Positions 4,580 to 63,965 of a DNA stretch of 64,000 nt are shown one piece after another; positions within the stretch are counted from its first letter, which is position 1, and every line of letters begins with the position of its first letter. Made by a program: the position numbers and the translations under genes. Source of the DNA: Rebecca billardiae RCC1528. Taxonomy: Eukaryota > Protista > Haptophyta. The notes beneath the pieces are model-generated. The model did no database searches and was not told the origin of the DNA. It saw only the letters and a list, made by a program, of their open reading frames with translations. The stretch lies in assembly GCA_965240325.2 (NCBI GenBank), contig OZ251223.1, positions 3,348,001 through 3,412,000 of the forward strand. Reading direction: 5' to 3'.

Positions 4580-4803
4580 CGCCGATTCGCGGCAGAGGTG
4601 TCGACGGGCGGGCGAGGCCGCACCGGGAAGCACTGGCGCATCGCGCGTGAGCGGTTCGTCACTGTCAACGGGGCTGCGAAAAGGTTTGGTGCACAAGCTA
4701 TGACTGAACTTTGCGCTGTGTTCTTCCAGTACGACCTCATTACAGTACGCTTGTCCGAAGCCGCGAAGCGCGGCCAAGCAAGCCGACGACGCTGCCGGCT
4801 CGC

Positions 4804-7800
4804 ATGAGCCGCGCGGCCTTCGCGCTCCCCTTCTCGCCGGCGCTCGCGAGCGCGCTGCGCGGCGATGTGGCTTGGAGCGACGAGCGCACCGCCGTGATCG
4901 TGCGGAGCCTCGCACGTAGCCCCGAGCTCGGCCCAGCCCCGCGTGCCCCTCGGGCCGCACACGGCGACGATTGGTCTCGCGCGCTCGCGTACGCGCACGC
5001 GCTCGTCGCGGACCGCGCAGGTCTGCTCCGAGCGCTGGGCGCGCCGACGGGGTCGTGTGATCAGTCAAACACCGAACGCACACCGCGCGTGTGCATCGCC
5101 GACATCGACGCGCTGCTTGCGCGCGCTCCCGCCGACGCCGGCGCGGCTGCCCTCTCGGCTGAGCTCGCGAGAGAGGATGTGCTCTGGGTGCCTCTGGCCG
5201 CGGACTTGGAGTCCGCGCCCGGCGGCGTGATCGTGCCCGAGGCGCTGGCGCTCGCCGTGGCCGCGGGTGGCCTGCTCGACGCGCACGCCAGCGTCATGGT
5301 CGCGGCCGGCGTGTGCGCGGCGCTGCGCGCTGCCACGGCGCGCGCGGCTCACACGCCGGATGAGCCGAGCGTGGGCGACGGGCGCTGCGCGGCGCGCGAG
5401 TTGCTCGGCCGACTCGAGTCGGTGGCGCAGACGCCCTTCGACCAGCCCGCCGCCGACGCCGCGGCGAGCGCCCTCGTCAGCACGCCGCACCCCGACGGCT
5501 GCTCGCACGACGCTGTGCTCGCCTCGCTCGAGCGCGCGCTGGTGTGCGCGCAGCTGTGCGGCGACCGTGGCGCGCTCGGGCGGCTGGAGGAGGTGCTCGT
5601 GGCGTGCGTGGGGCACGCGAGCGGCGGCGTGAGCTCCGCCGCGGTGCGGCTGCTCAACGCGCTCTACGACGGCACGCCCTGGCAGCTCGACGCGCCGCTG
5701 CCCGTGCGCGTGCGCGCCGTCGGTCAGCCGCTGAGTGTGCGCGCCTCCGCCAGGCAGCGGCCCGCGCCGCTGTGCGCTGCCGAGGCCGAGGCCGACGGGC
5801 GCGGCGCGCACGCGGCGGCGGGCGGAGCCGATGCCGCCACGCATGGCCGACTCGCCGTGCAGCTCGCCGAGCCGCACAGCGCGTGCGCGTGCGCACCGTC
5901 CGAGCGCCCAGCCGGCGCCGCGCCCGGCGCCACCGCCGCGCCGCCGCTTTGGGCGCGGCGGGTCTCGCTCGTGCTGCTGCCCGAGGCAGCCGCCCCGGGG
6001 GCGCTCGGCGCGGCCGGCGCGCACGCCGAGGGGCGCGGACTGGAGGACGAGTCGGAGAGCGTGACGGAGGACGACGACGACTCCGACACCGAGTCCGACG
6101 GTGCGGCAGCCGACGGCGCGCGCGGCGCGCCGCGCGCAGATGATGCTGACGCGTGCGGCGCGCGCGCCGCTCGCCGAGAGCGCTGCGGCGCGGCGGGCGA
6201 GGCGGCGGGCGTGGGGCGGGCGCCTCGGTCGGCCGGCGCGCGCGGCGCGCTGCGCGTGGCCCTCGGCACGCTCCACCGCGCCGGCCCGTACGACTGGCGC
6301 CTCGTGCGAGTTCTGCGCGATGGCACCGTGCTGCCATGCGGCGGCGGCGCGGGCGGCGCGGGCGGCGCGGGCGGCGCGGGCGGCGCCGGAGCGCGCTCGC
6401 GCGGGCGGGTGCTGGCGCAGCCCGCGGACCTGAGCGGCGCGCTGAGCGTGGCGAGCGTGCGCTTCGGCGCGAGCGGCGGCGTGCCCAGCCCCCGCTCCTT
6501 CGCCGAGCTCGAGGCCGCGCTGCCCGCCGTCCGCGCGCGCGGCATCCGCGCGCTGATCCTCGACGACTGCGTGGCGGACGGCTGCGGCACCGCGGCGCGC
6601 GCCGAGCTCGGCGGCTGCCGCGCGCTGGCGAGCGCGTGCGCGCGCGCGGCGGAGCTGGAGATGCGCGTGCTCGTGCGCGTGCGGGCGAGCGTGTGCGCCG
6701 CGCGCGCGCACCGCAAGCACAGCGCGCACGCGCTCCTCGCCGCCGACGACCACCACGGCGGGCTCGGGCGCGCGCGCTGCGCCGACGTGCCCAGCAGGCT
6801 GCTCCTCAACTGGCGGGCGGCGGCCGTGTGGCGCCAGCTGCGGGCGGAATGTGCCGCGCTCGTGCGCGGCTGCGGCGTGCACGGGGTGTTCCTGCACGGC
6901 GCGGACGAGTGGCCGCGGCTGCTCCGCGCCGACGCGGACGAGCTCGGCCGCATCGACGCGGACGGCGAGCGCCACTACCCGGCGGCGCGCGCGCTCGAGG
7001 CACCCGTGGTGCGGAGCGGGCGGCGGAGCGGCGGCGCCGGCGGCGCCGGCGGCGGTGTGGACGGTGGCGAGCGCGGCGCCGACGCGCTGGGGTACTGGCA
7101 CAGCGGCGCGTTCGCCGCGGGGTGGCCCAATCCCCTCCTCCTCGCCCTCAGCGCCGCGCTGAGCGCGTGCGCCCACCCGGACTCGGGCGCGCCCAGCGCG
7201 ATCGTGCTGGCTGGCTGTTCGCACGCGGAGCGGGCGGCCGCGCTCAGCGTGTCCGGCTGTGTGCCCGCCGCGTGCCCGCTGCTGCTGCCGCCGACGGGCG
7301 GCGCGCGCGCCGTCGCGCTGCTGGCGCGCACGCTGCCGCGCGGCGCGCTGCTCGCCGCCCGCCCGCCCGCCTCGCCCGAGCCGCCCGCGCCCACCGCGGC
7401 CGGGGCCGCAGGCTGCGCACACCGCGCCGCTCCGCTCGGCGCGGCGGGGCGCGCGCACGGCGGCGCGAGTGGGGCGGCGCGCCCCGGGTTTGGCGGCGGG
7501 CCCTCCTCGAGCGGGCTGCAGAACGGGCTGCTCGCGCTCGCGCTGCCTGTCGTGGCGTGCGCCGACGAGGAGACGGCGGCGGTGTGGGCTCCGCCCGCGA
7601 GCGTCTCGCGTGCGGCGGCCGCGGCGGCATCGGAGGCGGCGGCGTGCGGTGGCACGGGCGGCCGGAGCAGCACCGGCGCGTGCGCGGACGCGCCAGCGCC
7701 GCAGTGGGCGGGCGGCGTCGAGCCGGGCCTGCCCCGCGAGAGCCCCGACGCGCCCACCTCGCCGCCGCCGCCGCTCCCCGCCCGCGCGGCCCTCCTGCGC

Positions 7801-10800
7801 GCGCGCGCGCTCCACCCGCACCTCTTCCGCGCGCCCGCACACGCGGTGCGCGCGCTCGAGCTGCGCGCGCTCGGAGGCGCGGCCGCGATCGGCGTCGAGC
7901 GCGCGTGCGCGCACGCGTGGCTGGCGCCGCGCTCCGGCTCGGCGGTGGTGTTCGCGATGGGCACGGCCGGCTGGGCCGTCCGCGCGGCGCTGCCGCTCCC
8001 CGCCGCCCTGCTCCGCGCGCGCGCCCTCGGCGGCGCGCGGTGCGCGCACGGCGTCGTGCTGCGCGCGCGCGCGCTCGCGCAGTCGGCGGGCGTGCGCTGG
8101 GCGGCGGGCGGCGCGCACGGCTCGGGCGCGGGGCTGTACGCCGCGGCGGAGCTCGCCTCCGGCCAGCTCTGGGTCGAGCTGCCGCCGTGCGCCGGCGGCT
8201 CGGCCGTGTGCATCGAGATCACCGCCGCGCGCGTCGACGGCGCCGTCGGCGAGTGTGGCTGCTGCACTGAGCCGGCGCCGGCGCCCGGCGCGCCGGCGGA
8301 CGCGGCGCGCGCGCCGGCCGCGCGCGCGTGCGAGGGCTGCCTGGCGGCCGAGCTGCTCTCGCACGCGACGGCGCGGCTCGAGTACCTGCCGCACGGCATC
8401 GACGCGCGCGCCAACGCGGCGGCGAGCCTGCTCAGCACCGGGCTGCGCGAGGCCGCGGCGACGGGCGACGGCGGCACGCTGTGCGCCGCGCTCGGCCAGC
8501 TGCGCGCGTGCACGCGCGCCGCGCCCGCCGTGCTGCGGCGCGCGCTCGCCACCGCGCACCACGCGTACTCGCTGCTGCCCGACGCCGAGCTGACGCGCAT
8601 GATCGCGCGCGTCTCGGCGGGCGGGCGCAGCGCCGCGCTCCCACCGGCCGGCAGCGGCGACGGCGGCGGCGGCAGCGGCAGCGGCGGCGGCAGCGGCAGC
8701 GGCAGCGGCAGCAGTGAGGCGGGCCGCAGCGCCTCCTCCGCCGCCAGCCTGCAGCTCGGGCACGACGATGGCGGCGCGGCGCCGCGCGCGGACGCGGCGG
8801 CGGCGGGCGCGGCGGCGACGGGCGCGGCGCCGAGCGCGGACACCGCCGATGTGGGCGCGGCGGGCGCGAGCGCGGCCGATGCGCCGTGCGTGCGATCGCA
8901 CGACGGCGCCGCGCCAGGCGCGCCCACATCGGCGGCGGCGGACGCCGCGCGGCCGGCGGAGCTCTCCGCAACGGCCGTCGGCGCGGTGGCGGCCGCTGGC
9001 GGCGGGGGCGGCGGCCTGGGGCGCGCGGCGCTGTGCAGCGCGGGCGGAGGCGGCATGAGCGCGAGCGCGAGCTCGAGCGTCGACTCGAGCGCCAACGCGG
9101 ACGGGCGCGGCGTCTCCGATGAGGAGGCGCCCTCGCGCGGCGGCGGCGGGCGCGCGGCGGCGGGCGCGGCGGCGGCGGGCTCGGGCGCCGCACAGCCGCG
9201 CGGCGCGACGCGCGCCGCGCGCGCGCGCGCCGACGCGCACGCCGACGGCGCGGACGGCGCCGCCGCCGCCGCCGCCGCCCTGGACGGCGTCTCCGCCGCG
9301 CTCGGCCACGCGCCTGAGCCGCCCCTCGTGATCGCCTTCATCGCGCCCGAGTTCGGCCCGATCTCGTCGGTGGGCGGGCTGGGCGTGCTGGTCGGCCACC
9401 TGAGCGCCGCGCTCGCCGCCGGCGGCGCGGGCGTGGAGGTGCACGTGCTCGTGCCGTACTGGGCCGTGAGCGCGCGCGGCGACACGGGCGACTACGCGCG
9501 CGCGCGCGGCGCGGGGCGGCAGGCGGCGTGGGCCGTGCGCCACTTCACCGTCGACGCGCGCGCGGACGGCGCGCCGCCCGCGGTCGCGTGCGTGCGCTCC
9601 GCGTCGCTCCGCGGCGTGCGCGCGCACCTGCTCTCGTGCGACGGGCTCTTCGGCGGGCGGCCGTACGCGCAGCTCGACCTGACCGCCGCGGCGCTCTTTG
9701 CGCACGCCGCCGTGCGCGCGCTCGAGGTGCTCGCCGTGTGCGCGGACGTGATCGTCACCAACGACTGGACGACCGCGCTCGTGCCCGCGACGATCCGGCG
9801 CGCGCGCGCCGCGCGCGCCGCGCCGCCCGCCGGCGTCGCCGAGCGCGCCGCCGCCGCCGCGATCTCGCGCGCCGTCCTCGTCCACGTGTGCCACTCGCTC
9901 GAGGCCGGGTACGAGGGCTCTCTGCTCGTCTCGAGCGCCGAGCTGGCCGCGGTTGAGGCGATGGGCGTGCCGGCCGAGCTGCTGCTCGACGACGCGCCCA
10001 AGCGCGGAGCCGGCGGCGCGGCGCCGGGCGCGCACGGCGGGCCGCCGTACGCGCCCGCCGAGCTCGCGGGGAGCCGCGGCGCGCGGGAGCAGCAGCAGCG
10101 GCGGCAGCAGCGGCAGCAGCAGCAGCTGGACGCGCGGCGCGGCGGCGGGGCCGGCGCCTCGGCCAACGGCGCGCACGCCGTCAGCCTCTCGCGCGCCGCG
10201 CTGCTCTGCTGCGACCGCTGGGCGACCGTCGGCCTCTCCTACTGCGCGCGGCTGCTGGAGATGAGCCGGCTCGCGCCGCTGCTGCGCGCGCGCGGCCCGC
10301 CCATCATCGCGCCGCCCGGCGTGCCCCTCGACGAGCACCGCGCGGCCATGGCTGCCCTCGCGCCCTCGCGCGGCGCGGCCAAGGCGCAGCTCCAGCGGCT
10401 GTGCTTTGGCGCGGCGGGCGTGCGCGCGGCCACGCCCCTCCTCGCCTTCGTGGGCCGCATCACGCGGCAGAAGGGCGTCCACCTGCTGCTCGACGCGCTG
10501 CCCGCGCTGCTCGAGCGGCGCGGCGGCGACGTGCAGCTGGTCGTCTGCGGACGCGCCGAGCCCGCCGACCGGTATGCACAGAGCTGCGCGCGCCAGATGG
10601 GCGCGCTGCGCGAGCGCTACCCGCACCACTTCTGGGCGCGGCCGGCGCACTACTGCGCGCACGGCGCGCTCGTCAACCTCGCGGCGGACGTGTGCGTGAT
10701 GCCCTCCCTCTTCGAGCCCGGCGGGATCGTGCAGCACGAGTTCTTCGCGGCGGGCGCGCCCGTCGTCGCGTTCGACACGGACGGGCTGCGCGACTCTGTC

Positions 10801-11049
10801 CTCGACTTTGACGCCTCGCCCGCGCGCGGCTGCGGCTTCCTCTTCCGCGACCACACGCACGGCGCGCTGCTCGATGCGATCGAGCGCGCGCTGCGCGTGT
10901 ACGATGCGCCCGACGGCGAGGCGGGCGCGGCGCTGCGCGCGAACGCCGAGCTGGCCGCGGTCGACATCTCGCACACGGCGCAGGTGTGGGAGGTCGAGCT
11001 GCGCCGCATGTGCAACCGGCTCGAGCCGGCGGCGGCGGCGGGCATGTAA
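4804..11049 (+). CDS. Giant GT5 starch/glycogen-synthase-like protein with an N-terminal degenerate GH13 (alpha-amylase-like) domain
   Basis: Single ~2080-codon ORF. C-terminal GT5 motifs: APEFGPISSVGGLG, VIVTNDWTTALVP, HVCHS, FVGRITRQKGVHLL, MPSLFEPGGIVQHEF, TDGLRDSV, GFLF. Central GH13-like motifs: SFAELEAALPAVRARGIRALIL, LGG..ARAAELEMRVLV, LLNWRAAAVW, GVHGVFLHGA. Hidden in-frame introns cannot be excluded. Confidence 0.85.
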   Translation: MSRAAFALPFSPALASALRGDVAWSDERTAVIVRSLARSPELGPAPRAPRAAHGDDWSRALAYAHALVADRAGLLRALGAPTGSCDQSNTERTPRVCIADIDALLARAPADAGAAALSAELAREDVLWVPLAADLESAPGGVIVPEALALAVAAGGLLDAHASVMVAAGVCAALRAATARAAHTPDEPSVGDGRCAARELLGRLESVAQTPFDQPAADAAASALVSTPHPDGCSHDAVLASLERALVCAQLCGDRGALGRLEEVLVACVGHASGGVSSAAVRLLNALYDGTPWQLDAPLPVRVRAVGQPLSVRASARQRPAPLCAAEAEADGRGAHAAAGGADAATHGRLAVQLAEPHSACACAPSERPAGAAPGATAAPPLWARRVSLVLLPEAAAPGALGAAGAHAEGRGLEDESESVTEDDDDSDTESDGAAADGARGAPRADDADACGARAARRERCGAAGEAAGVGRAPRSAGARGALRVALGTLHRAGPYDWRLVRVLRDGTVLPCGGGAGGAGGAGGAGGAGARSRGRVLAQPADLSGALSVASVRFGASGGVPSPRSFAELEAALPAVRARGIRALILDDCVADGCGTAARAELGGCRALASACARAAELEMRVLVRVRASVCAARAHRKHSAHALLAADDHHGGLGRARCADVPSRLLLNWRAAAVWRQLRAECAALVRGCGVHGVFLHGADEWPRLLRADADELGRIDADGERHYPAARALEAPVVRSGRRSGGAGGAGGGVDGGERGADALGYWHSGAFAAGWPNPLLLALSAALSACAHPDSGAPSAIVLAGCSHAERAAALSVSGCVPAACPLLLPPTGGARAVALLARTLPRGALLAARPPASPEPPAPTAAGAAGCAHRAAPLGAAGRAHGGASGAARPGFGGGPSSSGLQNGLLALALPVVACADEETAAVWAPPASVSRAAAAAASEAAACGGTGGRSSTGACADAPAPQWAGGVEPGLPRESPDAPTSPPPPLPARAALLRARALHPHLFRAPAHAVRALELRALGGAAAIGVERACAHAWLAPRSGSAVVFAMGTAGWAVRAALPLPAALLRARALGGARCAHGVVLRARALAQSAGVRWAAGGAHGSGAGLYAAAELASGQLWVELPPCAGGSAVCIEITAARVDGAVGECGCCTEPAPAPGAPADAARAPAARACEGCLAAELLSHATARLEYLPHGIDARANAAASLLSTGLREAAATGDGGTLCAALGQLRACTRAAPAVLRRALATAHHAYSLLPDAELTRMIARVSAGGRSAALPPAGSGDGGGGSGSGGGSGSGSGSSEAGRSASSAASLQLGHDDGGAAPRADAAAAGAAATGAAPSADTADVGAAGASAADAPCVRSHDGAAPGAPTSAAADAARPAELSATAVGAVAAAGGGGGGLGRAALCSAGGGGMSASASSSVDSSANADGRGVSDEEAPSRGGGGRAAAGAAAAGSGAAQPRGATRAARARADAHADGADGAAAAAAALDGVSAALGHAPEPPLVIAFIAPEFGPISSVGGLGVLVGHLSAALAAGGAGVEVHVLVPYWAVSARGDTGDYARARGAGRQAAWAVRHFTVDARADGAPPAVACVRSASLRGVRAHLLSCDGLFGGRPYAQLDLTAAALFAHAAVRALEVLAVCADVIVTNDWTTALVPATIRRARAARAAPPAGVAERAAAAAISRAVLVHVCHSLEAGYEGSLLVSSAELAAVEAMGVPAELLLDDAPKRGAGGAAPGAHGGPPYAPAELAGSRGAREQQQRRQQRQQQQLDARRGGGAGASANGAHAVSLSRAALLCCDRWATVGLSYCARLLEMSRLAPLLRARGPPIIAPPGVPLDEHRAAMAALAPSRGAAKAQLQRLCFGAAGVRAATPLLAFVGRITRQKGVHLLLDALPALLERRGGDVQLVVCGRAEPADRYAQSCARQMGALRERYPHHFWARPAHYCAHGALVNLAADVCVMPSLFEPGGIVQHEFFAAGAPVVAFDTDGLRDSVLDFDASPARGCGFLFRDHTHGALLDAIERALRVYDAPDGEAGAALRANAELAAVDISHTAQVWEVELRRMCNRLEPAAAAGM

Positions 11050-11313: not shown

Positions 11314-12336
11314 TCATGCGTCGTCGGCGTCGCGATCGTCGCACAGATGAAGGCGGTCGCGGTGCAGCGCTGCGAGCAGCTCGACATAGTCAGGCTCAGA
11401 ATCGGCGGTGACCACGCCATGGCGGATGAGGAAGTCGAGCATCACCGCGACCATTGCCGGGCGAAGCGCACCGCTCCCTGCGCGGACCTCGGCCTCGAGC
11501 TCACGCATGGGCATCAGCCGGAACGCCTGGACCTCGCCGTCCGCGGCAGTCGGCTGCCAGTCCGCAGGGACCGGGAGGTCGAAGTTGAGATACACGGACT
11601 GCTTGAGCCGCGAGCCGTCGGGGCGGCTGGTCATCAGGCTGAGCGCGCCCGTGGCCACCGCGCGCGTGAATAGCTCGGCAGACACGCCCGCCTCCTCGGC
11701 CGCCTCCTTCTCGGCGTTGGCGCGCACACTCATCCCTGAGGCGAGCCCGCCCGCAGCGGTCGGGTCCCAGCACGACGGATAATAGCTCTTGTCTGCCGCG
11801 CGCTGTGCGAGCCACACGCCACGAGGGGGCTCCCCAGCCGAGAGGCCTGGCACGTAGCAGTGCACGTGCACGCCAGAGGACGTGGTGCCGAGCACCTGCG
11901 CGGCATTCCTGTCCACCGTCGCCAGGCGCGGAGCACCAAACGTCGGCGCGACGTCGAAACGCTCCCCGTGTCGGCCGGGCAGGATGCCTGCGGCGATGAG
12001 CGCGTCGGTGGCCACGTCGAGGGCCGCTGAACGCGAGCCTTCAGTGCCATCCATTGCGCGAGTCAGCCGGAGCGCGCTGGCACCAGCAACGCGTCCGCCT
12101 GAGCTCACCTCGAAGAGCGGTGTGCCACTCTCTCGCGAGGTGCATGCGGCAAGGATGGGCACAAGTGTCTGCTCCACCTGCCCCACGCAGCGGCCACCGA
12201 TGGAGAGTCCCAGGTACCTCGAGGCGTGGCGCGATGCATCAAGTGCGCGGATGCGCTCAAGCAACCGAGGCGCCTCCGTCGTGCTCGGGGCGATCGCGAG
12301 TCCCGCGGCGAGCATGGACACGGCCGCCGAGCTCAT
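11314..12336 (-). CDS. Nudix hydrolase, DUF4743 / plant NUDT20 / yeast YJR142W-like
   Basis: Nudix box GGLASGMSVRANAEKEAAEEAG. Family motifs DRNAAQVLG..GVH, WLAQRAADKSYYP, DGEVQAF, DFLIRHG. Hydrophobic N-terminus. Confidence 0.85.
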   Translation of the reverse strand: MSSAAVSMLAAGLAIAPSTTEAPRLLERIRALDASRHASRYLGLSIGGRCVGQVEQTLVPILAACTSRESGTPLFEVSSGGRVAGASALRLTRAMDGTEGSRSAALDVATDALIAAGILPGRHGERFDVAPTFGAPRLATVDRNAAQVLGTTSSGVHVHCYVPGLSAGEPPRGVWLAQRAADKSYYPSCWDPTAAGGLASGMSVRANAEKEAAEEAGVSAELFTRAVATGALSLMTSRPDGSRLKQSVYLNFDLPVPADWQPTAADGEVQAFRLMPMRELEAEVRAGSGALRPAMVAVMLDFLIRHGVVTADSEPDYVELLAALHRDRLHLCDDRDADDA

Positions 12337-35766: not shown

Positions 35767-36039
35767 ATGGCCGCCGACGGCGCGCCTGCCAAGGCGGGGG
35801 TGGCCGTCTTCTACGACCCCCAAGACGCGCGCGGCGTCGCTATCGAGGACGTGGACGAGGATGACGCGCACACTGCGGATCAGGAACAGGTAAACATCCC
35901 GGCTGTCCCCGACGACGAGCTGATCGAGCTCCAGCTGTCGGCACGATCAGCATTGAGTGTGAGGTCAGCACCTCCGACGGATGGACTCCGAAGGACAGGG
36001 CCAGCTGCACGATCAAAGTGTCCGTGCATACTGATGTGA
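35767..36039 (+). CDS. Small acidic hypothetical protein (90 aa)
   Basis: ATG in good context, GC3-rich codons in the 5' half (MAADGAPAKAGVAVFYDPQDARGVAIEDVDEDD), divergent from the sulfotransferase like other head-to-head pairs. Confidence 0.5.
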   Translation: MAADGAPAKAGVAVFYDPQDARGVAIEDVDEDDAHTADQEQVNIPAVPDDELIELQLSARSALSVRSAPPTDGLRRTGPAARSKCPCILM

Positions 36040-37674
36040 GAAAACGCCACATAATCTTGCTTGTGAGATCATTAACGCTTCTTCAACATACCCCCCAGCT
36101 CAGCAGCGGCTAGCTTAGTAGCCGTCTCGTCTGGCGTCTCAATATTATTATTGAATAGTGAATATTACTATGACTCTGTGAACGGCTCCCGGGACGGGCC
36201 GCGGCCCGGTCACGCCTCAAGGTCGGACGCACGCGGCCCGCCGGGTGCCGATCCGTGGCTGAGTGCGGGCTGGCAGCAGTGAGTTAGGCAGTCGCCTGGC
36301 GCCGCGGCACAGCAGCAGTCCATCGATCATCAGCATTGTAACACTGCATTGTAACTCGCGCCGTCATTCACTCATAGCGCCTACAAGTACAGCTGCCATC
36401 GGAACAGTATACTATGACTCGAGCGAAATTGACTTAGGACAACCGTCTATTCTTTTAAACAATCTGCTGCTGCTAGCTAGTCTATTACGCCGTCGGAATA
36501 ATCAACTGAATCAGTGACGGGATGACGACTTATTTATGTAGGCGACAGCGACGGTCAAATGTACTGTATCCGAACGCAGCATTCCCAGGTAGCTAGTTTA
36601 GCTGCATTATATTGTCACTACGGATTCCAGTTTAAAATATAGCTATTAGTAGCTTATAACTTATAGCAGGTGATTCGATCAGCGCACCGACGATCGGCGG
36701 CGAATACCACTTACCAGGCACGTACCCAGGTTGCAGTGACTCATTTTTTCACTGGCCGTTCACGCTGCCATCATCGCCAGTAAGAATTATTCGCGGTCCC
36801 GTGTCCAGCATGATCGGAGACAGAGGCTTGCTGAATGAGTGAATACTGGGCATGCTACTGCCATCACAAGACCGACTGAAAAGTGAAAATAACTACAACG
36901 ATTGTCAACATGATCAACATCGTCGACGGCCCGAGTGACTTGTCGGCTTCTCCAGGCAGGAGCCGGCGAAACTGTCAGGTCGGAGCCGGACTGGGACTGG
37001 GAGCGTTGCAGCGCACTGAGACACGCGCAGGGCAGCAACGAGCAGTGGGCCAGTGCAGCGGGGCCGAGCCGCGAGCAGCGCCGGGCGAGCCGCGCCGGGC
37101 CCGGGCCAACGATGAACGGGACGCGCTGCCTAGCGCCTGATTCCGACAGGCGGCCGGCGCTGCCTCTGACCCTGTCGTGCAGGGGCTCCCCCGCCCGGCG
37201 CCAGTCGGAGCAGGAAACGAGGCACGCTGGACAGTCGAAGGCCACGTACCGTGAGGCCTCGGCCACTCCGGCCAGACTGACAGACAGGGCCGGAGAGTAC
37301 CGTGCGGCGGTGCAATTTCTGTGAAGCTTGTGCCAGTCATATGCAATCTGTCATATCTGTGAGTGACTGAGACCGTAGGAAAGAATACAGCTAGCCTGCT
37401 TACTAGACTTAGAGTAGCCTAGGAATAATGAACTCGTCATCCGAAGAGAGTATCTTCATCGGAGAGTCGGAGTGCATTCTGACGTAGCCTGTCTAGCCAG
37501 TCTGCTAAGTGTGATATGTCTTCAATTCTAGTCATCTGCTGGTGATCTGGCGGAGTCGGGAGTATCTGGACGAGATCATTCGCGCGGCGCATTCCGACGT
37601 AAGATAGTGTCTAAGGTCCCCTTCGGCGGCGCCACTGGGGCGTGTTCACTGTGATACTGCTAAGAATAATACGA

Positions 37675-37677
<3 letters not shown>

Positions 37678-37753
<76 letters not shown>

Positions 37754-37771
37754 ACGATGATGATGATGATG
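37678..37771. repeat. (AT)n microsatellite followed by (GAT)n
   Basis: About 36 AT units (37678-37749), then GAT repeats. Confidence 0.95.
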
Positions 37772-37961
37772 ATTGGCCTGGCCCCTGGCCGTGCGATAAC
37801 GGTGATGCCACGGGAAGTCCGCGATCCATGCTTGGCGGTATCGCCCGATCGGTCGGGCGGCGCTGCCAATTTACAATAATATTACAATATTAATATAGGC
37901 ATGCAATATGATAAGGCTCGAACGGCCCTGACAGGCCCAGGCTTCGTAGTCGCCAGCGTCA

Positions 37962-38657
37962 TCATCTGAACTGCATCGCATCAGCAGTGTCCTCAGCATC
38001 GCTTTCCCTGCCGGACTCGTGCGGCAATCCGTCCTCGCCCATTCCTCCTCGAGGTGAGCGAAGCGTTGCCGGATTGTGATGACCATCCGTCATGCCCAAT
38101 GGCATCTGGGCTGCCAGGCTCGAAGCAAACTGCTTCTCCCATTCTCTCGAGAACGCAGCGAGCTTGGAGGCGTACTCTCGTTCTGCAGCAACGCGCTGCT
38201 CCCCACTGACGGCCTGCAGCTTGAGCTGACGCTCGGCCCCCGTGAGGCCATCACCGAACCGCTTGTCGATCATCCTGCTCCTCCGCACCAGCGCGATGCC
38301 TGTAGCAAGATTTCGCCGCGTCAGCTCGCTTGTCCTACCGGCACGTACAAGTTCCTCCATCTCGCGCAGGTGCTCCTCTATCGTCTCATCAGACGTGAGC
38401 CGGGAGTTCGCTAGAAGCGCCGTTCGTTCCCACAGGCTCTCGGCAATCCTATCGAGATGATCCGTCGCCTTCGGGCCAGGCGGCGGGATGGAGTTGGGAG
38501 CCATCCCCGGGGGCATCGCCACTGGCAGCCACTGCCACGGCCATAACGACCACTCGTCGATGTAGTAGGCCAACGCAACGCTTGCCAATATCCACGGGAG
38601 TGCCTGCGCGATGGGGCGGGCCGATCGAAAGTTATCACGCCGTCGTCGGGCCGCCAT
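37962..38657 (-). CDS. Hypothetical single-pass membrane protein
   Basis: MAARRRRDNF.. followed by hydrophobic ALPWILASVALAYYI and a helical C-terminal domain. Start uncertain. Confidence 0.55.
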   Translation of the reverse strand: MAARRRRDNFRSARPIAQALPWILASVALAYYIDEWSLWPWQWLPVAMPPGMAPNSIPPPGPKATDHLDRIAESLWERTALLANSRLTSDETIEEHLREMEELVRAGRTSELTRRNLATGIALVRRSRMIDKRFGDGLTGAERQLKLQAVSGEQRVAAEREYASKLAAFSREWEKQFASSLAAQMPLGMTDGHHNPATLRSPRGGMGEDGLPHESGRESDAEDTADAMQFR

Positions 38658-43877: not shown

Positions 43878-44530
43878 CTGATGAGCAGTGGTAGCCAGGC
43901 GAAGCCGTCGTCGCGGGCGAAGCTGCGCTGGGTGATGCGGCTGAGCAGTCGGGTTACCGCGCACCGCGCGCGTGGCCGTGATGGGTCGGCACAGCCCAGT
44001 CAAAGACACGGCATCGTATCGCCCTCTGGCCGCCAGCAGCATCACCTCTGCCGTCTGCGAGCGACTCGTAGTTGCAGCAGCAGCTGCCAAGAGCTTGCAC
44101 AAAGAAACTGCGCGACGCCGACGGGCGCGCCGACGCGCGTGGACGCGGGTCGGCACCGGGGCGGGGCGCGAGGGGGGAAAGAGGCACGAATGCGATGCCG
44201 ACGGCCGTTGGGACCCACCGCAGCCGCGCGCACCTGCGCTGAGTCTGTCGGATTGAACGATCGTGCGGCGGCGGCCTACATGGGCAGTGGCGGCTTCTCG
44301 GCGCCTCGTTCGGAGCCTCGGCTCGGCCCGCCCGTCAATGCGCGAGCCACAAAGGCCGTACCATGGTATAGTATTAATCATGAAGGGAGATATTATGAAG
44401 ATTTGTCCGCTCAAGTTTATCGTTCATATTCGTCAAGCTGTCCCGGACGCGCCGGTATTAAATGGGAGAGAATCCGAAGGGTCGTGCATGAAGCGGTAGA
44501 AATTCTTATGCTCATGATAACTTTCAGGCC

Positions 44531-44566
44531 CGTCAATGCGGGTGGCGATTGCCACCCGCATTGACG
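44531..44566. repeat. Perfect 16-bp inverted repeat with a 4-nt loop
   Basis: cgtcaatgcgggtggc-gatt-gccacccgcattgacg. Confidence 0.92.
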
Positions 44567-45553
44567 TCGTATCAGTAGATGACCAAAAGTATATCAACAA
44601 GAGTAGCTTGATAACCGTATGATACCACGGCGCGCGGGAACGTCGATTCAAGCTACCCGCACAATACCATATCGCGTCGCTGCCATCATTGTTGATGAGC
44701 GAATTCAGGCCTCATCAACAAATGATCATATGGGTCGAGAGCGAGAATGTTCGCCTTCAGGCTATGTCGTTCATCTGAAATACAAGAATTGGATTGCCAC
44801 CGAACCAAATGTTTGGTTCGCTTTATGCAGAATCTCGTTTCAGTTGAATGGCGGGCGATCGTCTTTCGTTGAAACGGTGTTTTTGAAGCGCAGTTCTCTT
44901 AAGAGAAGAGGGATGCGTCTAATCTAAAACGCTGTTTTTCAGAAGCGCGTGAATCAAAGCTGACGACCCAACCTATCGTTTCTATGGTTGGCGAGCTGTT
45001 TCAGGCTCTTACAATTCAGGCATCTTACTATGACGGAATGTTCTAACACACGGCTGGTGTTATGTGCTATTCCACCCTGCATTCCCCTAAGTGTTACTAT
45101 CGTTAAAATTAAGGGGCAGTACAAACGCAATCATTGCGGCAGCGATATCCACTCATACGCGGTGGCCACCTACCCAAAAATCCCCAAAATCCTGCGCGCA
45201 TCCTCTTTTTGATTTTGCGGAGCACGTGCGCCCCCCCCCCCCGGCTTTCGCTCACGCTCAGACCTTTCGGGGGGGGGGGGGGGGGGGGGGCGTGCGCCAT
45301 TACTACTAGCTACTAGACCCCAACCGTATAAATAAGGCGTTACAATCATTCAATGCGATCAGTCTCGTTATAGGTCTCGCAGGTAATACGACCGAGGGAC
45401 TGACGGTCGACACTGGAGTCTTCGTAGCCTAAAAACTAAAAGTACCATCATATTTATCCCCCCCCCCCGGCCATTGAAGCCGAGCGTGACTGTCAGAGCG
45501 AAAGCCGAAACGGCGCAAGTGTCGGTGTGAACGATTGGATGTGTCAGTGCCAT

Positions 45554-45835
<282 letters not shown>

Positions 45836-58724: not shown

Positions 58725-61700
58725 ATGGGCGACTCCGAGGAGGAGACGGAGTACGAGGAGGGCGATGAGTCCGGCCGCTTCAGCCGGGTGTGTGCACGTG
58801 CTCGCGCGGCTGATTCGCGGCGCCTCGCAGCGCAGCAGCGCTCATTCGTACCCGGTGCCCGTGGCCCCGCGCAGTGCGCCGGCGAGATGCTCGGCGAGGG
58901 CAGCTTCAAGGTCGTGTACAGAGGATTCGACCACGAGCAGGGCCGGGAGGTTGCGTGGAACGTCGTCAAGCTCGCAAAGGGGAATTCGCAGGCGGAGAAG
59001 CAGATTGAGGTCGAGATCGAGCTGCTGCAGAACTTGCACCATAAGAACATCATCAACTTCTACGGGCACTTCCACGGGCATAACGGACGACTAGTCTTCA
59101 TCACCGAGATGATGACGTCGGGCACGCTCAAAGAGTGCGCGCCGTGCCGCCGCCCCCCTCGGCTGCTGAGCGGCGCAGATCAGGGCTCGCAGCGTTGAGC
59201 ACCCCAACCCGTGCTCCATGCTTCCGCGCGGCTGCGGCTGCGAGGCTGCGCGCCCGCGTGCATGCGCCCTTCTCGGCATCCTCGCGCGCGCGCGTGCGCT
59301 CACCACCCGCCCTCGCTTGGCGCCGTCGCGCCTCCGCCTCCGCCCGCGCGCGCAGGTTTGTGCGCAAGCACAAGCGTGTCAAGCGGAAGGTGGTGAAGGA
59401 CTGGTGCCGGCAGATTCTCGAGGGGCTCATGTTCCTGCACGACAGCAAGATCATCCACCGCGACCTGAAGTGCGACAACATCTTCATCAACGGGCACGTG
59501 GGCGAGGTGAAGATCGGCGACCTGGGGCTCTCCACCTCCGTCCGCATCGTGTCGCACGCCGCGAGCGTGATCGGTGCGCGCTGTGCGCAGCGCACCGGCG
59601 CTGCTGCGCGCTGCACGCGCGGCGCGGCACCCGCTCGGACCAACCTCGGTCGTGCCCTGACGCATGTGCTGCGCGCTCGGCGGCATGGCCCCTCGCCCGC
59701 GCGCCCGCCGCGCCGCGCAGGCACGCCCGAGTTCATGGCGCCCGAGATGTACAACGAGAAGTACGACAAGGGGATTGACATCTACGCGTTTGGCATGTGC
59801 GTGATCGAGATGGTCACCAACGAGTACCCGTACGCCGAGTGCCAGAACCCGGCGCAGGTGTACAAGAAGGTGACGCAGGGCATCAAGCCGGCCGCGCTCA
59901 CTCGCGTCGCCGACCCGGACACGCGCGAGTTCATCGAGTCCTGCATCGAGTTCGACGTGGAGAAGCGCAAGTCCGGCCCGGAGCTGTACGCCGCGCCCTT
60001 CCTCTCGGAGAACTTGGACGAGGACAACAAGCCGGTGGCGATCGCGGAGGTGGTCAAGATGCCCGCGGTGCCGGAGCACGAGGCCGCGGCGCAGGCGCAG
60101 GCGGCGGCGCAGGCGCAGTCGCGCACCGCGGCGCAGGCCGATGCGCAGGCGCGGCCACCGCCTGCGCCCGCGCAGCCAGCGCCGGCCGACCCGGCGGCGC
60201 CGAGCGCGCCTGCTGGGCCACAGCCGCCAACGCCGGCTACGGAGGGCGCGTCGGCCGCCGCCGCCGCGCCCACGCCGGCGAATGGCGCCTCGTCCGCCTC
60301 GACGGTCGCCGCCGAGCGGCCTCACGCATCGCCGGACCACGAGGTGACTGCAGACTCGTTCCGACGCGCGGCCGATGATGCTGGGGCGAGCCGGCGTGCT
60401 GCCGACGAGGCGGCGGCGGCGGCAGCGGCGGCGGCGGCAGCGGCGGTGGCGGCGGCGCGCGCGCAGACCGCGCACCAGCCCGTGGATCTGCAGAGCGTGT
60501 CGAGCGTCGAGGGCGCGGCCGAGACGGCCAGCATCGACCTCGAAGGGAGCGTGATCGTCAGCGAACACGGCGGCGAGATGGCGCGCGACGCCCAGATCGA
60601 GATCTCCCTCACCGTCAGCATCCAGGGCCAGCGCAAGGAGGTGAACTTCGTCTTCGCGTACAACCGCGATACGCCGGAGAAGGTTGCCGAGGAGATGCGC
60701 GACGAGTTATCGACGGACGAGTCCACCGAACGGATCGCCGGCATGATCCGCGAAGAGATCGCCCGCCGGCATTCAGGCATTGACGCGCCGCCCGCGCGAG
60801 GTGCCGAGGCCGACGCGCCACCGCCGCAGCAGCAGTGGCAGCAGCGCGTCGAGCAGCAGCCGCCGCCGCCGTCGCAGTGGCAGCAGCCCCAGCAGCAGCC
60901 GCCGCAGCCGCAGCAGCAGCAGCCGCCGCAGCAGCAGTACTACGAGCAGACGCTGCAGCCGCAGCTCAATTGGCCACAGCAGCAGCCGTCGCAGTCGCAG
61001 CCGCAGCAGCCGCAGCAGCAGTCGTGGCCGCAGTATCAACCGCAACAGTCGGCTGACGCCGGCGCATCCCAGCACCAGGGGGTGGCATTCGGCCAGCTTT
61101 ACCAGCAGCAGGCGCACCCTCAGTACCAGCAGCAGCAGCCGCAGCAGCAGCCGCAGCAGCAGCCGCAGCAGCCGCAGCCGCAGCCGCAACAGCAGCAGCC
61201 GCAGCAGCAGCAGCCGCCACAGCAGCAGCAGTACGCACCGCCGCCGCCGCAGCAGCAGCAGCCATCGCAGTACGCACAACAGTCGCAGCAGCAGCAGCAG
61301 CAGCAGTACGCTCAGGCGCACTCACAGCAGCACACGCAACAGCAGCAGTGGCCGCAGCAGCCGCAGCAGCCGCAGCAGCCGCAGCAGCCGCAGCAGCCGC
61401 AGCAGCCGCAGCAGCCGCAGCAGCCGCAGCAGCCGCAGCAGCCGCAGCAGCCGCAGCAGCTGCAGCAGCCGCAGCAGCCGCAGCAGCCGCAGCAGCCGCC
61501 TCAGCAGCCGCAGCAGCCGCAGCAGCAGCAGCAGCAGCAGCAGCAGCCGCCGCCGCAACAACCATCGCAGTACGCACAGCAGCCTCCGCAGCAGCAGCAG
61601 CAGCAGCCTCCGCCGCAGCAGCAGTACGACCCGCAAGCCTGGCAGTCGCAGCAGTACTTCGAGCACCAGCAGAGGCAGGTGCAGCCCGCCCAGCAGCAGT

Positions 61701-63965
61701 ACTACGAGCAGGCTCAGCAGTGGCAGCAGCCGCCGCAGCCGCAGCAGCAGCAGCAGCAGTCGGCGCAGCAGCAGCAGCCGCAGTCACAGCCACCGCCGGC
61801 GCATCAGCCGCCCGCGCATCAGCAGCCGCAGCAGCAGCACTGGCAGCAACAGCCGCCGTCACAGCCGGCGCAGCAGCAGCAGTGGCAGCAGCAGCCTCCG
61901 CAGACGCAGACGCAGACACAGACGCAGCCGCAGCAGCCGCAGCACTCGCAGCAGCCGCAGCAGCAGCCACCGCAGCAGCAGTGGCAGCAACAGCCGCCGC
62001 AGCAGCAGCCGCAGCAGCAGCCGCAGCAGCAGCAGCAGCAGCCGCAGCAGCAGCCGCAGCCGCTGCCGCAGCAGCAGCAGCCGCAGCCGCAGCCGCAGCC
62101 GCAGCCGCAGCCGCAGCCGCAGCAGCAACCGTCGCAGTACGCACAGCAGCAGCCGCAGCAGCAGCAGCAGCCGCAGCAGCCGGCGCAGCAGTGGCAGCAG
62201 CCGGCGCAGCAGCAGCAGCCGCCGGCGCAGCAGCAGTGGCAGCAGCAGCCACAGCAGCACGCACCCCTGCAACAGCCGCCGCTGGAGCCGCCGCCACCGC
62301 CGCAGCAGCAGCAGCCGCCGGCACAGCAGCAGCAGCAGCCGCCGCCGCCGCCGCAGCAGCCTCCGCCGCAGCAGCAGCAACCACCGCAGCAGCAGCAGCA
62401 GCAGCAGCAGCCACCGCAGCAGCAGCAGCAGTCGCTGCCGCCGCCGCCACAGCCACAGCAGCCGCAGCAGTGGCAGCAGCAGCCGCAGCAGCCGACACCG
62501 CAGCAGCAGCAGCCACTGCACACTCAGCCCGCTCCGCCCGCGCAAGACCCTCGCGAGCACGACGTCGGCGCGAGCAGCCCGGCCGCGCCCAGCCAGGACG
62601 GCGGGAGTGCCTCGTCCCAGCCGGCATGCTCGCATTCGACGGCAGCCGGCTCCTCCTCCCTCCACGCCATGCCGGCCGAGGTGGACACCGGCCTGCGCGG
62701 CGTGAAGGCGCTGAGCCGGCTCACGGTCGATGAAGGTGACGAGGCGGAGGGCGAGGACGGCGAGGAGGGCGAGGTGGACGCCGAGGCCGAGCAGCTGCGG
62801 CTGCTGCAGCTCGAGGAGGAGCACCAGCGGCAGAAGGCCGAGCTCGACGCCAAGTTCCGCGCGGAGAGGGAGGCACTCATGTACGCGCCGCGCCGAGCGC
62901 AAGCGCCGCGCCGAGCGCGAGCGCCGGCGCCCGTGCGCGCAAGCACGCGGACGGACCGGCGCTGCCGCGCCTCTCTCACCCGCGCACCCGCGCGTCGCGC
63001 TCGCGCGCTCCCGTCCCACCACGCCCGCCTCGCTGCGCAGGCAGAGCAAGGGCAAGAAGTCCGCGGTCCGCCGACGAGACTCCAAGTGCGCGACCGATGG
63101 CTCCGTGACGCCGGGCTCCAGCTCAACCTCGAGCCCGACGCGCCCACCGCTCCACCCGACGGTGTGGCCGGTGGGCGGCGATGCGGGCGCAGGCTCGAGC
63201 GCCGCGGCGGCGGGCTTGTTCCACTCTGCAGAGGACGCTCGCCCGGTGCCGCACTCGCGCTCCAACCCGGGCGAGCTCGACCGCGCCGCGCTCGAGCACG
63301 CGGATGTGGTCAGCACCCGCCCGCTGCGGAACGGCGGCCTGGTGCCCGCGTCAGGCAGCGTGCCCAACCTGCCGGTGGCCGCGGCGGCCGGCGCGACCAT
63401 GGAGCGGCCGGCGCAGCTGCAGACTGGCCCTGGATCAACCCCAATCAGCCCGTCGGCCAGCACGGCGCCGCACGCGCCGCCGCACCCCTCGCCGACGTGC
63501 GCCAGTCCGATTGCAGCAGCGACGCAGCCGGCTGTGAACGGCGCCGAGAGCGGCGCTCCCGCGGCGGGCGGCTTGGTCGGCAGTGGTGGTGCGTCTACGC
63601 CGAGCCTCAACGGCGCGGAGGCGCGCGCCGGCCCGCAGCACAGCCTCTCGACCGGCAGCCTGGACACGGGCGCGGCGGGCGCGCACGCGCTTCCGAAGAA
63701 GAAGCCGGAGGCGCAGCTGACCGTTGCCATGATGCGCGAGCTCGAGCTCAAGAACCTCGGCGAGCTCGGCAAGTCACGAGGCAAGGAGTCCGCTGCTGGG
63801 CACCACCCCACGTCGATGGGCGCGGCCGCTAAGCCCAAGGCGATGCAGGAGGCCCGTGCGAGCTCACAGCGCGGCAGCGGCCGTTTCGACGGGGACGACG
63901 GCGAGTTTCAGCAGTGGCAGCAAGCTGCGGGCGCGGCGGCGAAAGAGCGCGGCGGCCCCAGATAG
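58725..63965 (+). CDS. WNK: WNK (With-No-lysine) kinase with a CCT-like domain and a very long Q/P-rich tail, 5 exons
   Basis: Catalytic Lys in subdomain I ([12 protein letters not shown]); VAWN replaces VAxK; [45 protein letters not shown]; CCT-like [19 protein letters not shown]. Introns 58788-58874, 59135-59355, 59574-59720, 62881-63040. Confidence 0.93.
60826..62512 (+). repeat. CAG/CCG coding repeat (~560-aa Q/P tract of WNK)
   Basis: Includes a (CCGCAGCAG)n array at about 61352-61497 and recurrent PSQYAQQ and QQWQQ units. Confidence 0.95.

What the first reader, a model, noticed from the sequence alone, without database searches (positions are those of the whole stretch)
4804..11049. 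GH13-GT5 alpha-glucan synthase fusion in an apparent beta-glucan-storing alga
Seen: a ~2080-aa ORF with an amylase-like barrel (~6490-7150) and a complete GT5 domain (~9325-11030). Established: amylase-like + GT5 fusions are known from alveolate/parabasalid-type glucan synthases and, separately, fungal alpha-1,3-glucan synthases. Haptophytes are described as storing beta-1,3-glucan, not starch or glycogen. Inference: if the host is a haptophyte, this points to an unrecognised alpha-glucan pathway or a relic or repurposed enzyme.
Basis: partly seen in the sequence, partly recalled or inferred. Interest (0 to 1): 0.75.

Follow-up and report, generated by a model that had tools for sequence, protein, structure and literature searches.

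The report
Divergent glycogen-synthase-type gene in a haptophyte
This alga, which should store beta-glucan, carries a real 2,081-residue gene of the old eukaryotic glycogen/starch-synthase family, with a dead amylase-like part and an altered transferase part, so it is a known kind of gene in an unexpected host, not a new kind of enzyme.

Summary
Window 4804-11049 (+) is one uninterrupted coding exon: GC3 is at least 0.84 in a single frame from about 5000 to 11010. It ends in a GT5 domain (Pfam PF08323 + PF00534).

The N-terminal 1,500 residues match no Pfam model. They are nevertheless homologous to the N-terminal extension of the eukaryotic UDP-glucose-type GT5 glycogen/starch synthases of Galdieria, Cyanidium, Toxoplasma, Gregarina and Acytostelium. 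That extension is GH13-like by profile search and by fold (Z about 19).

In the window copy the three GH13 acidic residues read R625, H698 and G804, so that module is non-catalytic. The GT5 module keeps its Asp, His, Arg, Lys and Glu core. It has lost four residues that are invariant in 15 of 15 other family members, including a donor-glucose O6-binding Asn, and it lacks the usual C-terminal CBM48.

The host looks like a pavlovophyte haptophyte. The genome holds one GT5, one intact GH13_8 branching enzyme and at least ten GT48 loci. I detected no GT35, GH77, GH133, GH14, GH15 or GT3.

A 2021 paper already notes alpha-glucan metabolism in Emiliania as unpublished data.

Verdict: a new, divergent member of a known family; its function is uncertain.

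The parts
4804..11049 (+). Whole coding sequence, one exon, 2,081 aa plus stop
   Evidence: ORF list and translation. GC3 periodicity holds in one frame throughout. The start at 4804 agrees with the start of homologue P0012, whose residues 3-329 align to aa 8-339.
4804..5778 (+). N-terminal all-helical module (aa 1-325). The conserved core is aa about 205-320 and carries the family motif LNxLYDGxxWQL. Its function is unknown.
   Evidence: Matched by P0012 (45% identity) and about 15 other proteins at aa 230-320. In alignment A3, D289 and W293 are invariant. The AlphaFold2 model is helical and confident only for aa about 205-295.
5776..6423 (+). Region between the helical module and the barrel (aa 325-540), containing an acidic low-complexity insert. 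Its last part (aa about 448-540) folds as the beta-sandwich N-domain seen before the barrel in cyclomaltodextrinase, TVAII and GlgE.
   Evidence: VIA-align matches to 1ea9, 1jib and 5cim start at model residues 124-136, which is aa 448-460. The family motif G(F/P)YDW and GR(F/V)(I/L)xxP is conserved. The first part of this region has low model confidence.
6424..7395 (+). GH13-like (beta/alpha)8 barrel (aa about 541-864), non-catalytic. R625 stands for the region I Asp, H698 for the nucleophile Asp and G804 for the acid/base Glu.
   Evidence: pLDDT 85-97. Foldseek and VIA-align matches are GH13 enzymes, apart from one GH31 chain at Foldseek rank 4. The family profile hits GH13 chains in the PDB: 4gkl at 6e-10, and 31 of 32 hits. 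Column counts: the nucleophile is D in 22 of 43 members, and the acid/base is E in 25 of 43 and D in 10 of 43.
7396..9324 (+). Pro/Ala/Gly-rich, mostly disordered stretch (aa 865-1507). It holds a possible amylase domain-C-like segment (aa about 1045-1190, judged by eye only) and a conserved helical linker before the GT5 domain.
   Evidence: pLDDT below 50 in the model. Composition is 25% Ala and 12% Gly. The domain-C reading is my inference from the sequence pattern and from the N-termini of P0113 and P0119; no tool result supports it.
9325..10431 (+). GT5 N-terminal Rossmann half (aa 1508-1876), with a Gln/Arg/Gly-rich insert at aa about 1745-1800. It carries SVGGLG, NDW (D1654), H1697-S1698, G1810 and P1838.
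   Evidence: PF08323 at aa 1510-1669. Homology to kin begins exactly at aa 1508. Motif table.
10432..11046 (+). GT5 C-terminal Rossmann half (aa 1877-2081). R1885, K1890 and E1971 are kept, and TGGL reads T1992-D1993-G-L. The protein ends without a CBM48.
   Evidence: PF00534 at aa 1877-2031. Alignment to E. coli GlgA. Motif table. No AMPK1_CBM-like sequence anywhere in the window. A convergent NUDIX gene lies at 11314-12336 (-).

Best explanation
Shown: this is a real, intact, single-exon nuclear gene of a pavlovophyte-like haptophyte. It belongs to the ancient eukaryotic, cytosolic, UDP-glucose-type GT5 glycogen/starch synthase family of red algae, apicomplexans, amoebozoans and many other protists. 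The family layout is a helical module, a GH13-like N-domain and barrel, a linker, and GT5. In this copy the GH13-like barrel has lost all three acidic residues and cannot be a glycosidase.

Inferred: the barrel is kept as a glucan-binding or positioning module. The GT5 module keeps the Asp of NDW, the His above the anomeric carbon, the Arg and Lys that hold the diphosphate, and the Glu. It therefore most likely still transfers glucose from UDP-glucose to the non-reducing end of an alpha-1,4 chain, probably slowly or with altered substrate handling because four family-invariant residues are changed. The genome's single, catalytically intact GH13_8 branching enzyme would then branch the product. 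This would give a small cytosolic glycogen-like pool beside the dominant beta-glucan made by GT48 enzymes. In short, it would be a reduced relic of the ancestral eukaryotic glycogen pathway.
For: - Coding status: GC3 periodicity.
- GT5 domain. phmmer gives 230-276 bits to the GT5 parts of the long family members.
- N-terminal homology: 68 proteins match, and 10 of the 11 longest ones scanned carry GT5, mostly with AMPK1_CBM as well. The named ones are Galdieria, Cyanidium, Toxoplasma, Gregarina and Acytostelium.
- GH13 nature of the module.
- Dead triad.
- Core GT5 residues kept.
- Intact branching enzyme: regions DVVHSH, GFRFD, AEE and YAECHD are present. It is 44-46% identical to fungal, animal and plant GBE and 58% identical to the Diacronema lutheri protein. 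A conserved branching enzyme implies that an alpha-1,4 glucan substrate exists.
- Window and P0001 are 51% identical overall and 63% identical in the C-terminal half, and they share the unusual residues. This argues for constraint rather than decay.
- Literature: this GT5 type is the UDP-Glc enzyme of eukaryotic ancestry (PMC6086201), and alpha-glucan metabolism in Emiliania is mentioned as unpublished (PMC7965971).
Against: - Four positions that are invariant in 15 of 15 other family members are changed: N to S1698 in the His-Asn motif, S to G1810, N to P1838 and G to D1993. The Asn equivalent to P1838 binds O6 of the donor glucose in solved GT5 structures (PMC6086201).
- The usual C-terminal CBM48 is absent.
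- No phosphorylase, GH77, GDE_C, beta-amylase, glucoamylase, GT3 or second GH13 enzyme was detected in the genome. A storage role would therefore lack a known mobilisation route.
- I have no expression data and no biochemical data.
- From my own knowledge, pavlovophytes are described as storing beta-1,3-glucan.
Confidence: 0.5

Rival explanations
1. Repurposed transferase. In this divergent clade, which I take to be the haptophyte one without having shown it, the GT5 domain has changed its donor sugar or its acceptor, for example to a sugar modified at C6 or to a non-glucan acceptor. It would then make a structural or secreted glycan rather than storage glycogen.
For: - The Asn that binds O6 of the donor glucose is lost in all four lineages of the divergent clade, where it reads P, A, G or S, while 15 of 15 other members keep it (role of the Asn from PMC6086201).
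- The clade sits on a long, well-supported branch: SH-aLRT 100 in the quick tree.
- Sister lineages have deleted the GH13-like barrel, and none carries the CBM48.
- No alpha-glucan catabolic enzymes were detected.
Against: - An intact, conserved branching enzyme is kept in this genome and in Diacronema lutheri, which points to ordinary alpha-1,4 chains.
- The residues for the diphosphate and the catalytic core are unchanged.
- The long branch may be inflated by the extreme amino-acid composition, which the tree tool flagged.
Confidence: 0.22
2. Pseudoenzyme. Both modules are catalytically inert and the protein survives as a scaffold or regulator, for example binding glucans or partner enzymes.
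For: - The GH13 triad is fully lost.
- There are four hits at GT5 invariant positions, including an Asp introduced into the TGGL glycine loop.
- The CBM48 is lost.
- A quarter of the protein is Ala, with long disordered stretches.
- This matches the earlier first-reader note s1-372207.
Against: - D1654, H1697, R1885, K1890 and E1971 are all retained, as is the GGLG loop.
- The odd residues G1810 and D1993 are shared with P0001 at only 51% overall identity, so they are maintained rather than drifting.
- The branching enzyme would have no substrate, because this is the only GT5 and there is no GT3.
Confidence: 0.2
3. A fungal Ags1-type alpha-1,3-glucan synthase, with an extracellular GH13 transglycosylase, an intracellular GT5 and a membrane exporter.
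For: It has the same order of a GH13-like part followed by a GT5 part.
Against: - No hydrophobic segment reaches a Kyte-Doolittle 19-residue mean of 1.9, and the protein ends right after GT5, so there is no C-terminal multi-pass membrane domain.
- The GH13 part is inactive.
- All named relatives are protist and red-algal glycogen/starch synthases, and none is fungal Ags.
Confidence: 0.02
4. Not a gene of this organism: a chance open frame in 82% GC DNA, a pseudogene, or a contaminant contig.
For: Stops are rare in such GC-rich DNA, and the antisense strand has a 1,969-aa ORF. The exact protein is not in the public protein collection.
Against: - Codon-position periodicity holds over all 6.2 kb.
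- Homologues match three separate parts of the protein.
- There are no frameshifts or stops.
- The window lies at 3.35 Mb on contig C3, and that contig also carries a GT48 gene at 4.11 Mb.
Confidence: 0.02

Closest known systems
Eukaryotic UDP-glucose-type GT5 glycogen/starch synthase, e.g. Galdieria sulphuraria starch synthase XP_005707965.1, Cyanidium caldarium KAK4536037.1, Toxoplasma gondii 'putative glycogen synthase' EPR58431.1
   Same: The order of modules is the same: helical part, GH13-like N-domain and barrel, linker, GT5. Sequence homology holds in both halves. The family-specific GT5 features are present: Ser/Thr instead of the KxGGL lysine, and NDW instead of HDW.
   Different: - No C-terminal AMPK1_CBM/CBM48.
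- The three GH13 acidic positions read R, H and G, whereas Galdieria has LDNAQ and a Glu.
- Four family-invariant GT5 residues are changed.
- Composition is extreme, with 25% Ala.
- The host is a beta-glucan-storing haptophyte.
Unnamed metagenomic GT5 proteins P0001/P0104, P0002/P0113 (Tara Oceans marine metagenome) and P0003/P0119
   Same: They are the nearest GT5 relatives: 51-57% identity for P0001/P0104. They form one clade with SH-aLRT 100 and share the loss of the O6-binding Asn. P0001 also shares G1810 and D1993.
   Different: They lack the GH13-like barrel: none was found in up to 3.6 kb upstream or inside the 953-985-aa proteins. The window protein keeps it.
GH13 enzymes with an N-domain: cyclomaltodextrinase 1ea9, TVAII 1jib, GlgE 5cim
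   Same: The fold of the N-domain plus (beta/alpha)8 barrel matches: Z 17.7-19.0, 272-283 aligned residues, rmsd 3.3-4.0 A. Region II of the family aligns with VDGFRLD of TreZ.
   Different: Sequence identity is 8-17% across the 50 matches listed. The window copy has none of the catalytic Asp/Glu/Asp and fails Pfam PF00128.
Fungal alpha-1,3-glucan synthase Ags1/Mok1 (GH13 + GT5 + membrane domain)
   Same: A GH13-like part precedes a GT5 part in one polypeptide.
   Different: There is no membrane domain and no fungal Ags sequence among the relatives. The Ags architecture is recalled from my own knowledge, not tested by alignment here.

Membership tests
Eukaryotic UDP-Glc-type GT5 glycogen/starch synthase (red-algal/alveolate/amoebozoan type) | GT5 catalytic domain, both Rossmann halves | tested here: met
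   PF08323 at 1.5e-21 and PF00534 at 1.4e-18, both above their cut-offs.
Eukaryotic UDP-Glc-type GT5 glycogen/starch synthase (red-algal/alveolate/amoebozoan type) | GT5 domain closest to family members rather than to bacterial GlgA or plant SS | tested here: met
   230-276 bits to the GT5 parts of the Galdieria, Toxoplasma, Acytostelium and other long members, against 57 bits to E. coli GlgA. TIGR02095 scores 144.8, below its cut-off of 328. The tree had no bacterial or plant outgroup.
Eukaryotic UDP-Glc-type GT5 glycogen/starch synthase (red-algal/alveolate/amoebozoan type) | Long N-terminal extension with the conserved helical motif and the GH13-like module | tested here: met
   68 hits to aa 1-1200. 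Ten of the 11 longest hits scanned carry GT5. Alignments A1 to A3.
Eukaryotic UDP-Glc-type GT5 glycogen/starch synthase (red-algal/alveolate/amoebozoan type) | C-terminal CBM48 (AMPK1_CBM); common in the family but not universal | tested here: not met
   No Pfam hit and no tblastn hit in the window. The Acytostelium protein P0025 also lacks it.
Eukaryotic UDP-Glc-type GT5 glycogen/starch synthase (red-algal/alveolate/amoebozoan type) | Family-invariant donor- and acceptor-site residues | tested here: inconclusive
   D, H, R, K, E and the GGLG loop are kept. Four positions that are invariant in 15 of 15 other members are changed: S1698, G1810, P1838 and D1993.
Eukaryotic UDP-Glc-type GT5 glycogen/starch synthase (red-algal/alveolate/amoebozoan type) | Alpha-1,4 glucosyl transfer from UDP-glucose | not testable with these tools
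   Needs an enzyme assay or complementation.
GH13 alpha-amylase family (as an enzyme) | (beta/alpha)8 barrel of GH13 type | tested here: met
   Foldseek probability 1.0, with the listed hits GH13 apart from one GH31 chain at rank 4. VIA-align Z 17-19. The family profile matches GH13 chains in the PDB.
GH13 alpha-amylase family (as an enzyme) | Catalytic Asp nucleophile, Glu acid/base and transition-state Asp, plus conserved regions I-IV | tested here: not met
   H698 stands for the nucleophile, G804 for the acid/base and R625 for the region I Asp. No NHD-type region IV is recognisable in the family consensus. No PF00128 hit.
Fungal Ags1-type alpha-1,3-glucan synthase | C-terminal multi-pass membrane domain after GT5 | tested here: not met
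   No hydrophobic segment, and the protein ends about 50 aa after the PF00534 match.
Bacterial/plastid ADP-Glc glycogen/starch synthase (GlgA, SSI-IV, GBSS) | KxGGL lysine, HDW motif, scores above the NCBIfam glgA cut-offs | tested here: not met
   S1522 stands in place of the Lys, and NDW in place of HDW. All glgA models score far below their cut-offs.

The most novel reading that the evidence does not exclude
The divergent GT5 clade to which this gene belongs, which I take to be the haptophyte one, has changed chemistry. All four lineages sampled have lost the Asn that binds O6 of the donor glucose, and the sister lineages have lost the barrel. If so, the enzyme no longer makes storage glycogen. 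It would build a different, still undescribed glycan, possibly together with the retained branching enzyme, in algae thought to use only beta-glucans.
Probability: 0.2. Interest if true: 0.7.

Novelty: new member of a known kind. Interest (0 to 1): 0.45.

Why it matters
Haptophytes are treated as beta-glucan storers. Models of storage-polysaccharide evolution propose that the ancestors of SAR and haptophytes had both alpha- and beta-glucan metabolism, and for haptophytes the only support I found is one remark citing unpublished Emiliania data (PMC7965971).

This locus gives a concrete, chromosome-level example in a pavlovophyte-like genome. One synthase and one intact branching enzyme are kept, the degradative half was not detected, and the synthase is visibly altered. 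That makes the question directly testable: does the alga make any alpha-glucan, and what does this enzyme transfer?

The data also show that the GH13-like extension of this enzyme family has lost its nucleophile in about half of the members sampled. This bears on how the 'one enzyme does it all' red-algal and apicomplexan synthases work.

Tried and rejected
- One search was my own slip: the piece was out of frame. I repeated it in frame.
- The word search with the whole protein found nothing. Low-complexity words probably filled the candidate list, so this says nothing about relatives.
- Pfam on three N-terminal pieces at E up to 10, and phmmer of the barrel piece (aa 500-966) against the PDB, gave nothing real.
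- The ESM Atlas pointed to TIM-barrel glycosidases of GH36, GH31 and GH66 at scores of 0.87-0.90. The fold class was right but the families were wrong.
- I looked for the barrel in the DNA around the nearest GT5 relatives (L002, L003, L009, L010, L012) with a family HMM. None was found.
- An exact look-up of the window protein found nothing in the collection, so I got no transcript evidence that way.
- The careful maximum-likelihood tree did not finish in 300 s. I used the quick tree, which is flagged for composition bias and has no outgroup.
- The N-terminal helical module folded with low confidence, so I did not search it against the PDB.
- A GT8 search gave 21 loci, but I did not resolve whether any of them is a glycogenin.
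- I could not search the Diacronema lutheri genome or any named haptophyte genome for the GT5 orthologue.
- Rejected readings: Ags1-type synthase, plastid ADP-Glc synthase, chance ORF and contaminant. The reasons are given under the rival explanations.

Full report

The region holds an open frame at 4711..11049 (+). The first ATG is at 4804, which gives 2,081 residues. The DNA here is 74-83% GC against about 65% around it, and the antisense strand also carries a 1,969-aa open frame. Length alone is therefore no evidence of a gene.

The decisive signal is codon-position composition. In the frame of this ORF, third-position GC is 0.84-1.00 in every 300-nt block from 5011 to 11010 and second-position GC is lowest. 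Outside these limits the pattern changes phase or fades. So the whole 6.2 kb is coding in one frame, with no sign of introns.

The start at 4804 agrees with homologue P0012, whose residues 3-329 align to residues 8-339. Upstream lies a TPR gene on the minus strand. Downstream lies a convergent DUF4743-NUDIX gene at 11314-12336.

**2. The GT5 part**

Pfam finds Glyco_transf_5 at aa 1510-1669 and Glycos_transf_1 at aa 1877-2031, both well above their cut-offs. NCBIfam glgA models match but fall far below their cut-offs. E. coli GlgA aligns in both halves.

**3. The N-terminal 1,500 residues**

Neither Pfam at E up to 10 nor phmmer of the barrel piece (aa 500-966) against PDB sequences recognises anything. 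The word-based search with the whole protein was empty. An ESM Atlas look-up gave only a weak lead to TIM-barrel glycosidases.

The exhaustive HMMER search with aa 1-1200 found 68 proteins. They cluster on two conserved stretches, aa about 230-320 and aa about 595-880. Ten of the 11 longest hits scanned (1,072-2,530 aa) carry a GT5 domain downstream, and most also have a C-terminal AMPK1_CBM.

The named hits are the Galdieria sulphuraria and Cyanidium caldarium starch synthases, the 3,004-aa Toxoplasma gondii 'putative glycogen synthase', a Gregarina protein and an Acytostelium protein. There is also an MMETSP transcript, P0080. The window's GT5 part scores 230-276 bits against the GT5 parts of these same proteins.

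Both halves therefore place the gene in the UDP-glucose-using GT5 glycogen/starch synthase family 'of eukaryotic ancestry', described for red algae, glaucophytes and many heterotrophic protists (PMC6086201; bioRxiv 10.64898/2026.09.25.754361).

**4. Is the extension amylase-like?**

Yes, at family and fold level.

- A profile of 44 family sequences hits the GH13 alpha-amylase 4gkl at 6e-10.
- A profile of 27 members that mostly lack GT5 hits 32 PDB sequences, 31 of them GH13: TreZ, TreY, branching enzymes, isoamylase and neopullulanase. The family's GvdGvhLDnaq aligns with VDGFRLDAVHA of TreZ.
- An AlphaFold2 model built with that alignment is confident (pLDDT 85-97) for aa about 484-854.
- Foldseek's top PDB matches are GH13 enzymes, apart from one GH31 chain at rank 4, at probability 1.0.
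- VIA-align gives Z 17-19 over 240-290 residues, including the beta-sandwich N-domain of cyclomaltodextrinase, TVAII and GlgE.

**5. The window's barrel is dead as an enzyme**

At the nucleophile column the family has Asp in 22 of 43 members, and the window has H698. At the acid/base column the family has Glu in 25 and Asp in 10, and the window has G804. The region I Asp is R625.

The nearest relatives also lack the nucleophile: P0017 has Pro, P0038 Thr, P0080 Glu and Toxoplasma Ser. Loss of catalysis in this module is thus widespread in the family and not peculiar to this gene.

**6. The GT5 active site**

I aligned the window with 18 family GT5 domains and tabulated key columns.

- Kept: the GGLG loop, D1654 (NDW), H1697, R1885, K1890 and E1971.
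- Changed, where 15 of 15 other members are invariant: Asn of the His-Asn motif to S1698, Ser of TVS to G1810, Asn of xNGx to P1838, and the first Gly of TGGL to D1993.

In solved GT5 structures the Asn equivalent to P1838 binds O6 of the donor glucose together with the His, and the His-Asn motif is described as strictly conserved (PMC6086201).

The P1838-type loss is shared by P0001, P0002 and P0003. G1810 and D1993 are shared with P0001, which is only 51% identical overall. That looks like maintained change rather than decay. The protein has no hydrophobic segment and no CBM48.

**7. Relatives and the barrel**

In a quick maximum-likelihood tree the window groups with P0001/P0104 (SH-aLRT 99). 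Together with P0002/P0113/P0116 (which include a Tara Oceans contig next to a Mg-protoporphyrin methyltransferase gene) and P0003/P0119, it forms a clade with support 100 on a long branch.

The tool flags composition bias, and the tree has no outgroup, so the depth of the branch is uncertain.

These relatives have no barrel, either upstream or inside the proteins. Their N-termini resemble only the segment that precedes the GT5 domain; this is my reading. Separate metagenomic fragments (P0012, P0017, P0038) do carry the N-terminal modules at 33-48% identity.

**8. Host and pathway context**

The window is at 3.35 Mb on contig C3 of a 72-Mb, 41-contig assembly. The own-genome searches found the following.

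| Family searched | Result |
|---|---|
| GT5 (PF08323) | one locus, this gene |
| GH13 (PF00128) and CBM48 (PF02922) | one enzyme, at C8:1011539-1013659; a second CBM48 match at C12 is the AMPK1_CBM protein listed below |
| AMPK1_CBM protein | one, at C12 |
| CBM20 | one, fused to GT20, at C27 |
| GT8 | 21 loci; glycogenin not resolved |
| GT48 | at least 10 loci |
| GT35 | none detected |
| GH77 | none detected |
| GT3 | none detected |
| GDE_C | none detected |
| GH14 | none detected |
| GH15 | none detected |

The enzyme at C8 is a full eukaryote-type branching enzyme with all four catalytic regions. It is 44-46% identical to fungal, animal and plant GBE. Its best named hit is Diacronema lutheri KAG8468126.1 at 58% identity.

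These searches read six frames exon by exon and score only the best candidates, so an absence is suggestive and not proof.

The Diacronema hit, the GT48 expansion and an independent note in this scan ('Pavlova-like alga', s1-355061) agree on a pavlovophyte-like haptophyte. I did not do a formal taxonomic placement.

**9. What it most likely does**

Shown: membership of the family, a dead GH13-like module, a GT5 core that is conserved but altered, and a conserved branching enzyme as the only partner.

Inferred: the protein still elongates alpha-1,4 chains from UDP-glucose, perhaps weakly, with the barrel serving as a glucan-binding module. Together with the branching enzyme it would make a small glycogen-like pool, a reduced relic of the ancestral eukaryotic pathway. 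I put this at about 0.5.

The main rivals are a change of donor or acceptor specificity (0.22) and a pseudoenzyme scaffold (0.2). An Ags1-type synthase and a non-gene are each about 0.02.

**10. Novelty**

The family and its occurrence in protists and red algae are known.

PMC7965971 lists Haptista among lineages with alpha-glucan metabolism. [quoted passage not shown] My literature searches found no description of the haptophyte enzyme itself, of its altered residues, or of the missing catabolic half.

I therefore file it as a new, divergent member of a known kind, of moderate interest.

The earlier first-reader note s1-372207, on this same stretch, proposed that both modules are partly disabled. 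My column counts support that for the GH13 part and partly for the GT5 part.

Noticed in passing
window 60821-62513, inside ORF 59135..63832 (+): A 1.7-kb imperfect GCA/GCC tandem array (periods 18, 27 and 45; 65-71% matches) lies inside a 1,565-aa open frame. The region has an AT skew of about 0.4-0.5.
   Followed up: no
own genome C27:536437-538134 (-), L016:190-1887: A 565-aa ORF joins a starch-binding CBM20 to the start of a GT20 (trehalose-6-phosphate synthase type) domain. This is a starch-binding module in an alga with no known starch.
   Followed up: partly
own genome C12:1783300-1785717 (+), L008:4301-6718: An 805-aa ORF has an AMPK1_CBM glycogen-recognition module at aa 80-162 and no other Pfam domain. 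This is the module that the window's synthase lacks at its C-terminus.
   Followed up: no
own genome C8:1011539-1013659 (+), L007:4540-6660: An intact eukaryote-type GH13_8 branching enzyme, the only GH13 enzyme detected in the genome. It is 58% identical to Diacronema lutheri KAG8468126.1.
   Followed up: yes
own genome: 24 PF02364 matches on contigs C3, C8, C11, C13, C19, C20, C24, C30 and C34: At least ten GT48 (beta-1,3-glucan synthase type) loci, several in open frames of 2,400-3,500 aa. This is a large expansion.
   Followed up: no
L012:1811-4768 (P0113) and P0119: The nearest marine-metagenome relatives of the GT5 domain are 953-985 aa long. They have lost the GH13-like barrel but keep about 440 aa before the GT5 domain.
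   Followed up: partly
window 36001-38000 and 44001-48000: Low-GC islands (0.53-0.55) lie in an otherwise 0.62-0.83 GC window. One of them overlaps another first-reader note about hairpins at 44531-45297.
   Followed up: no
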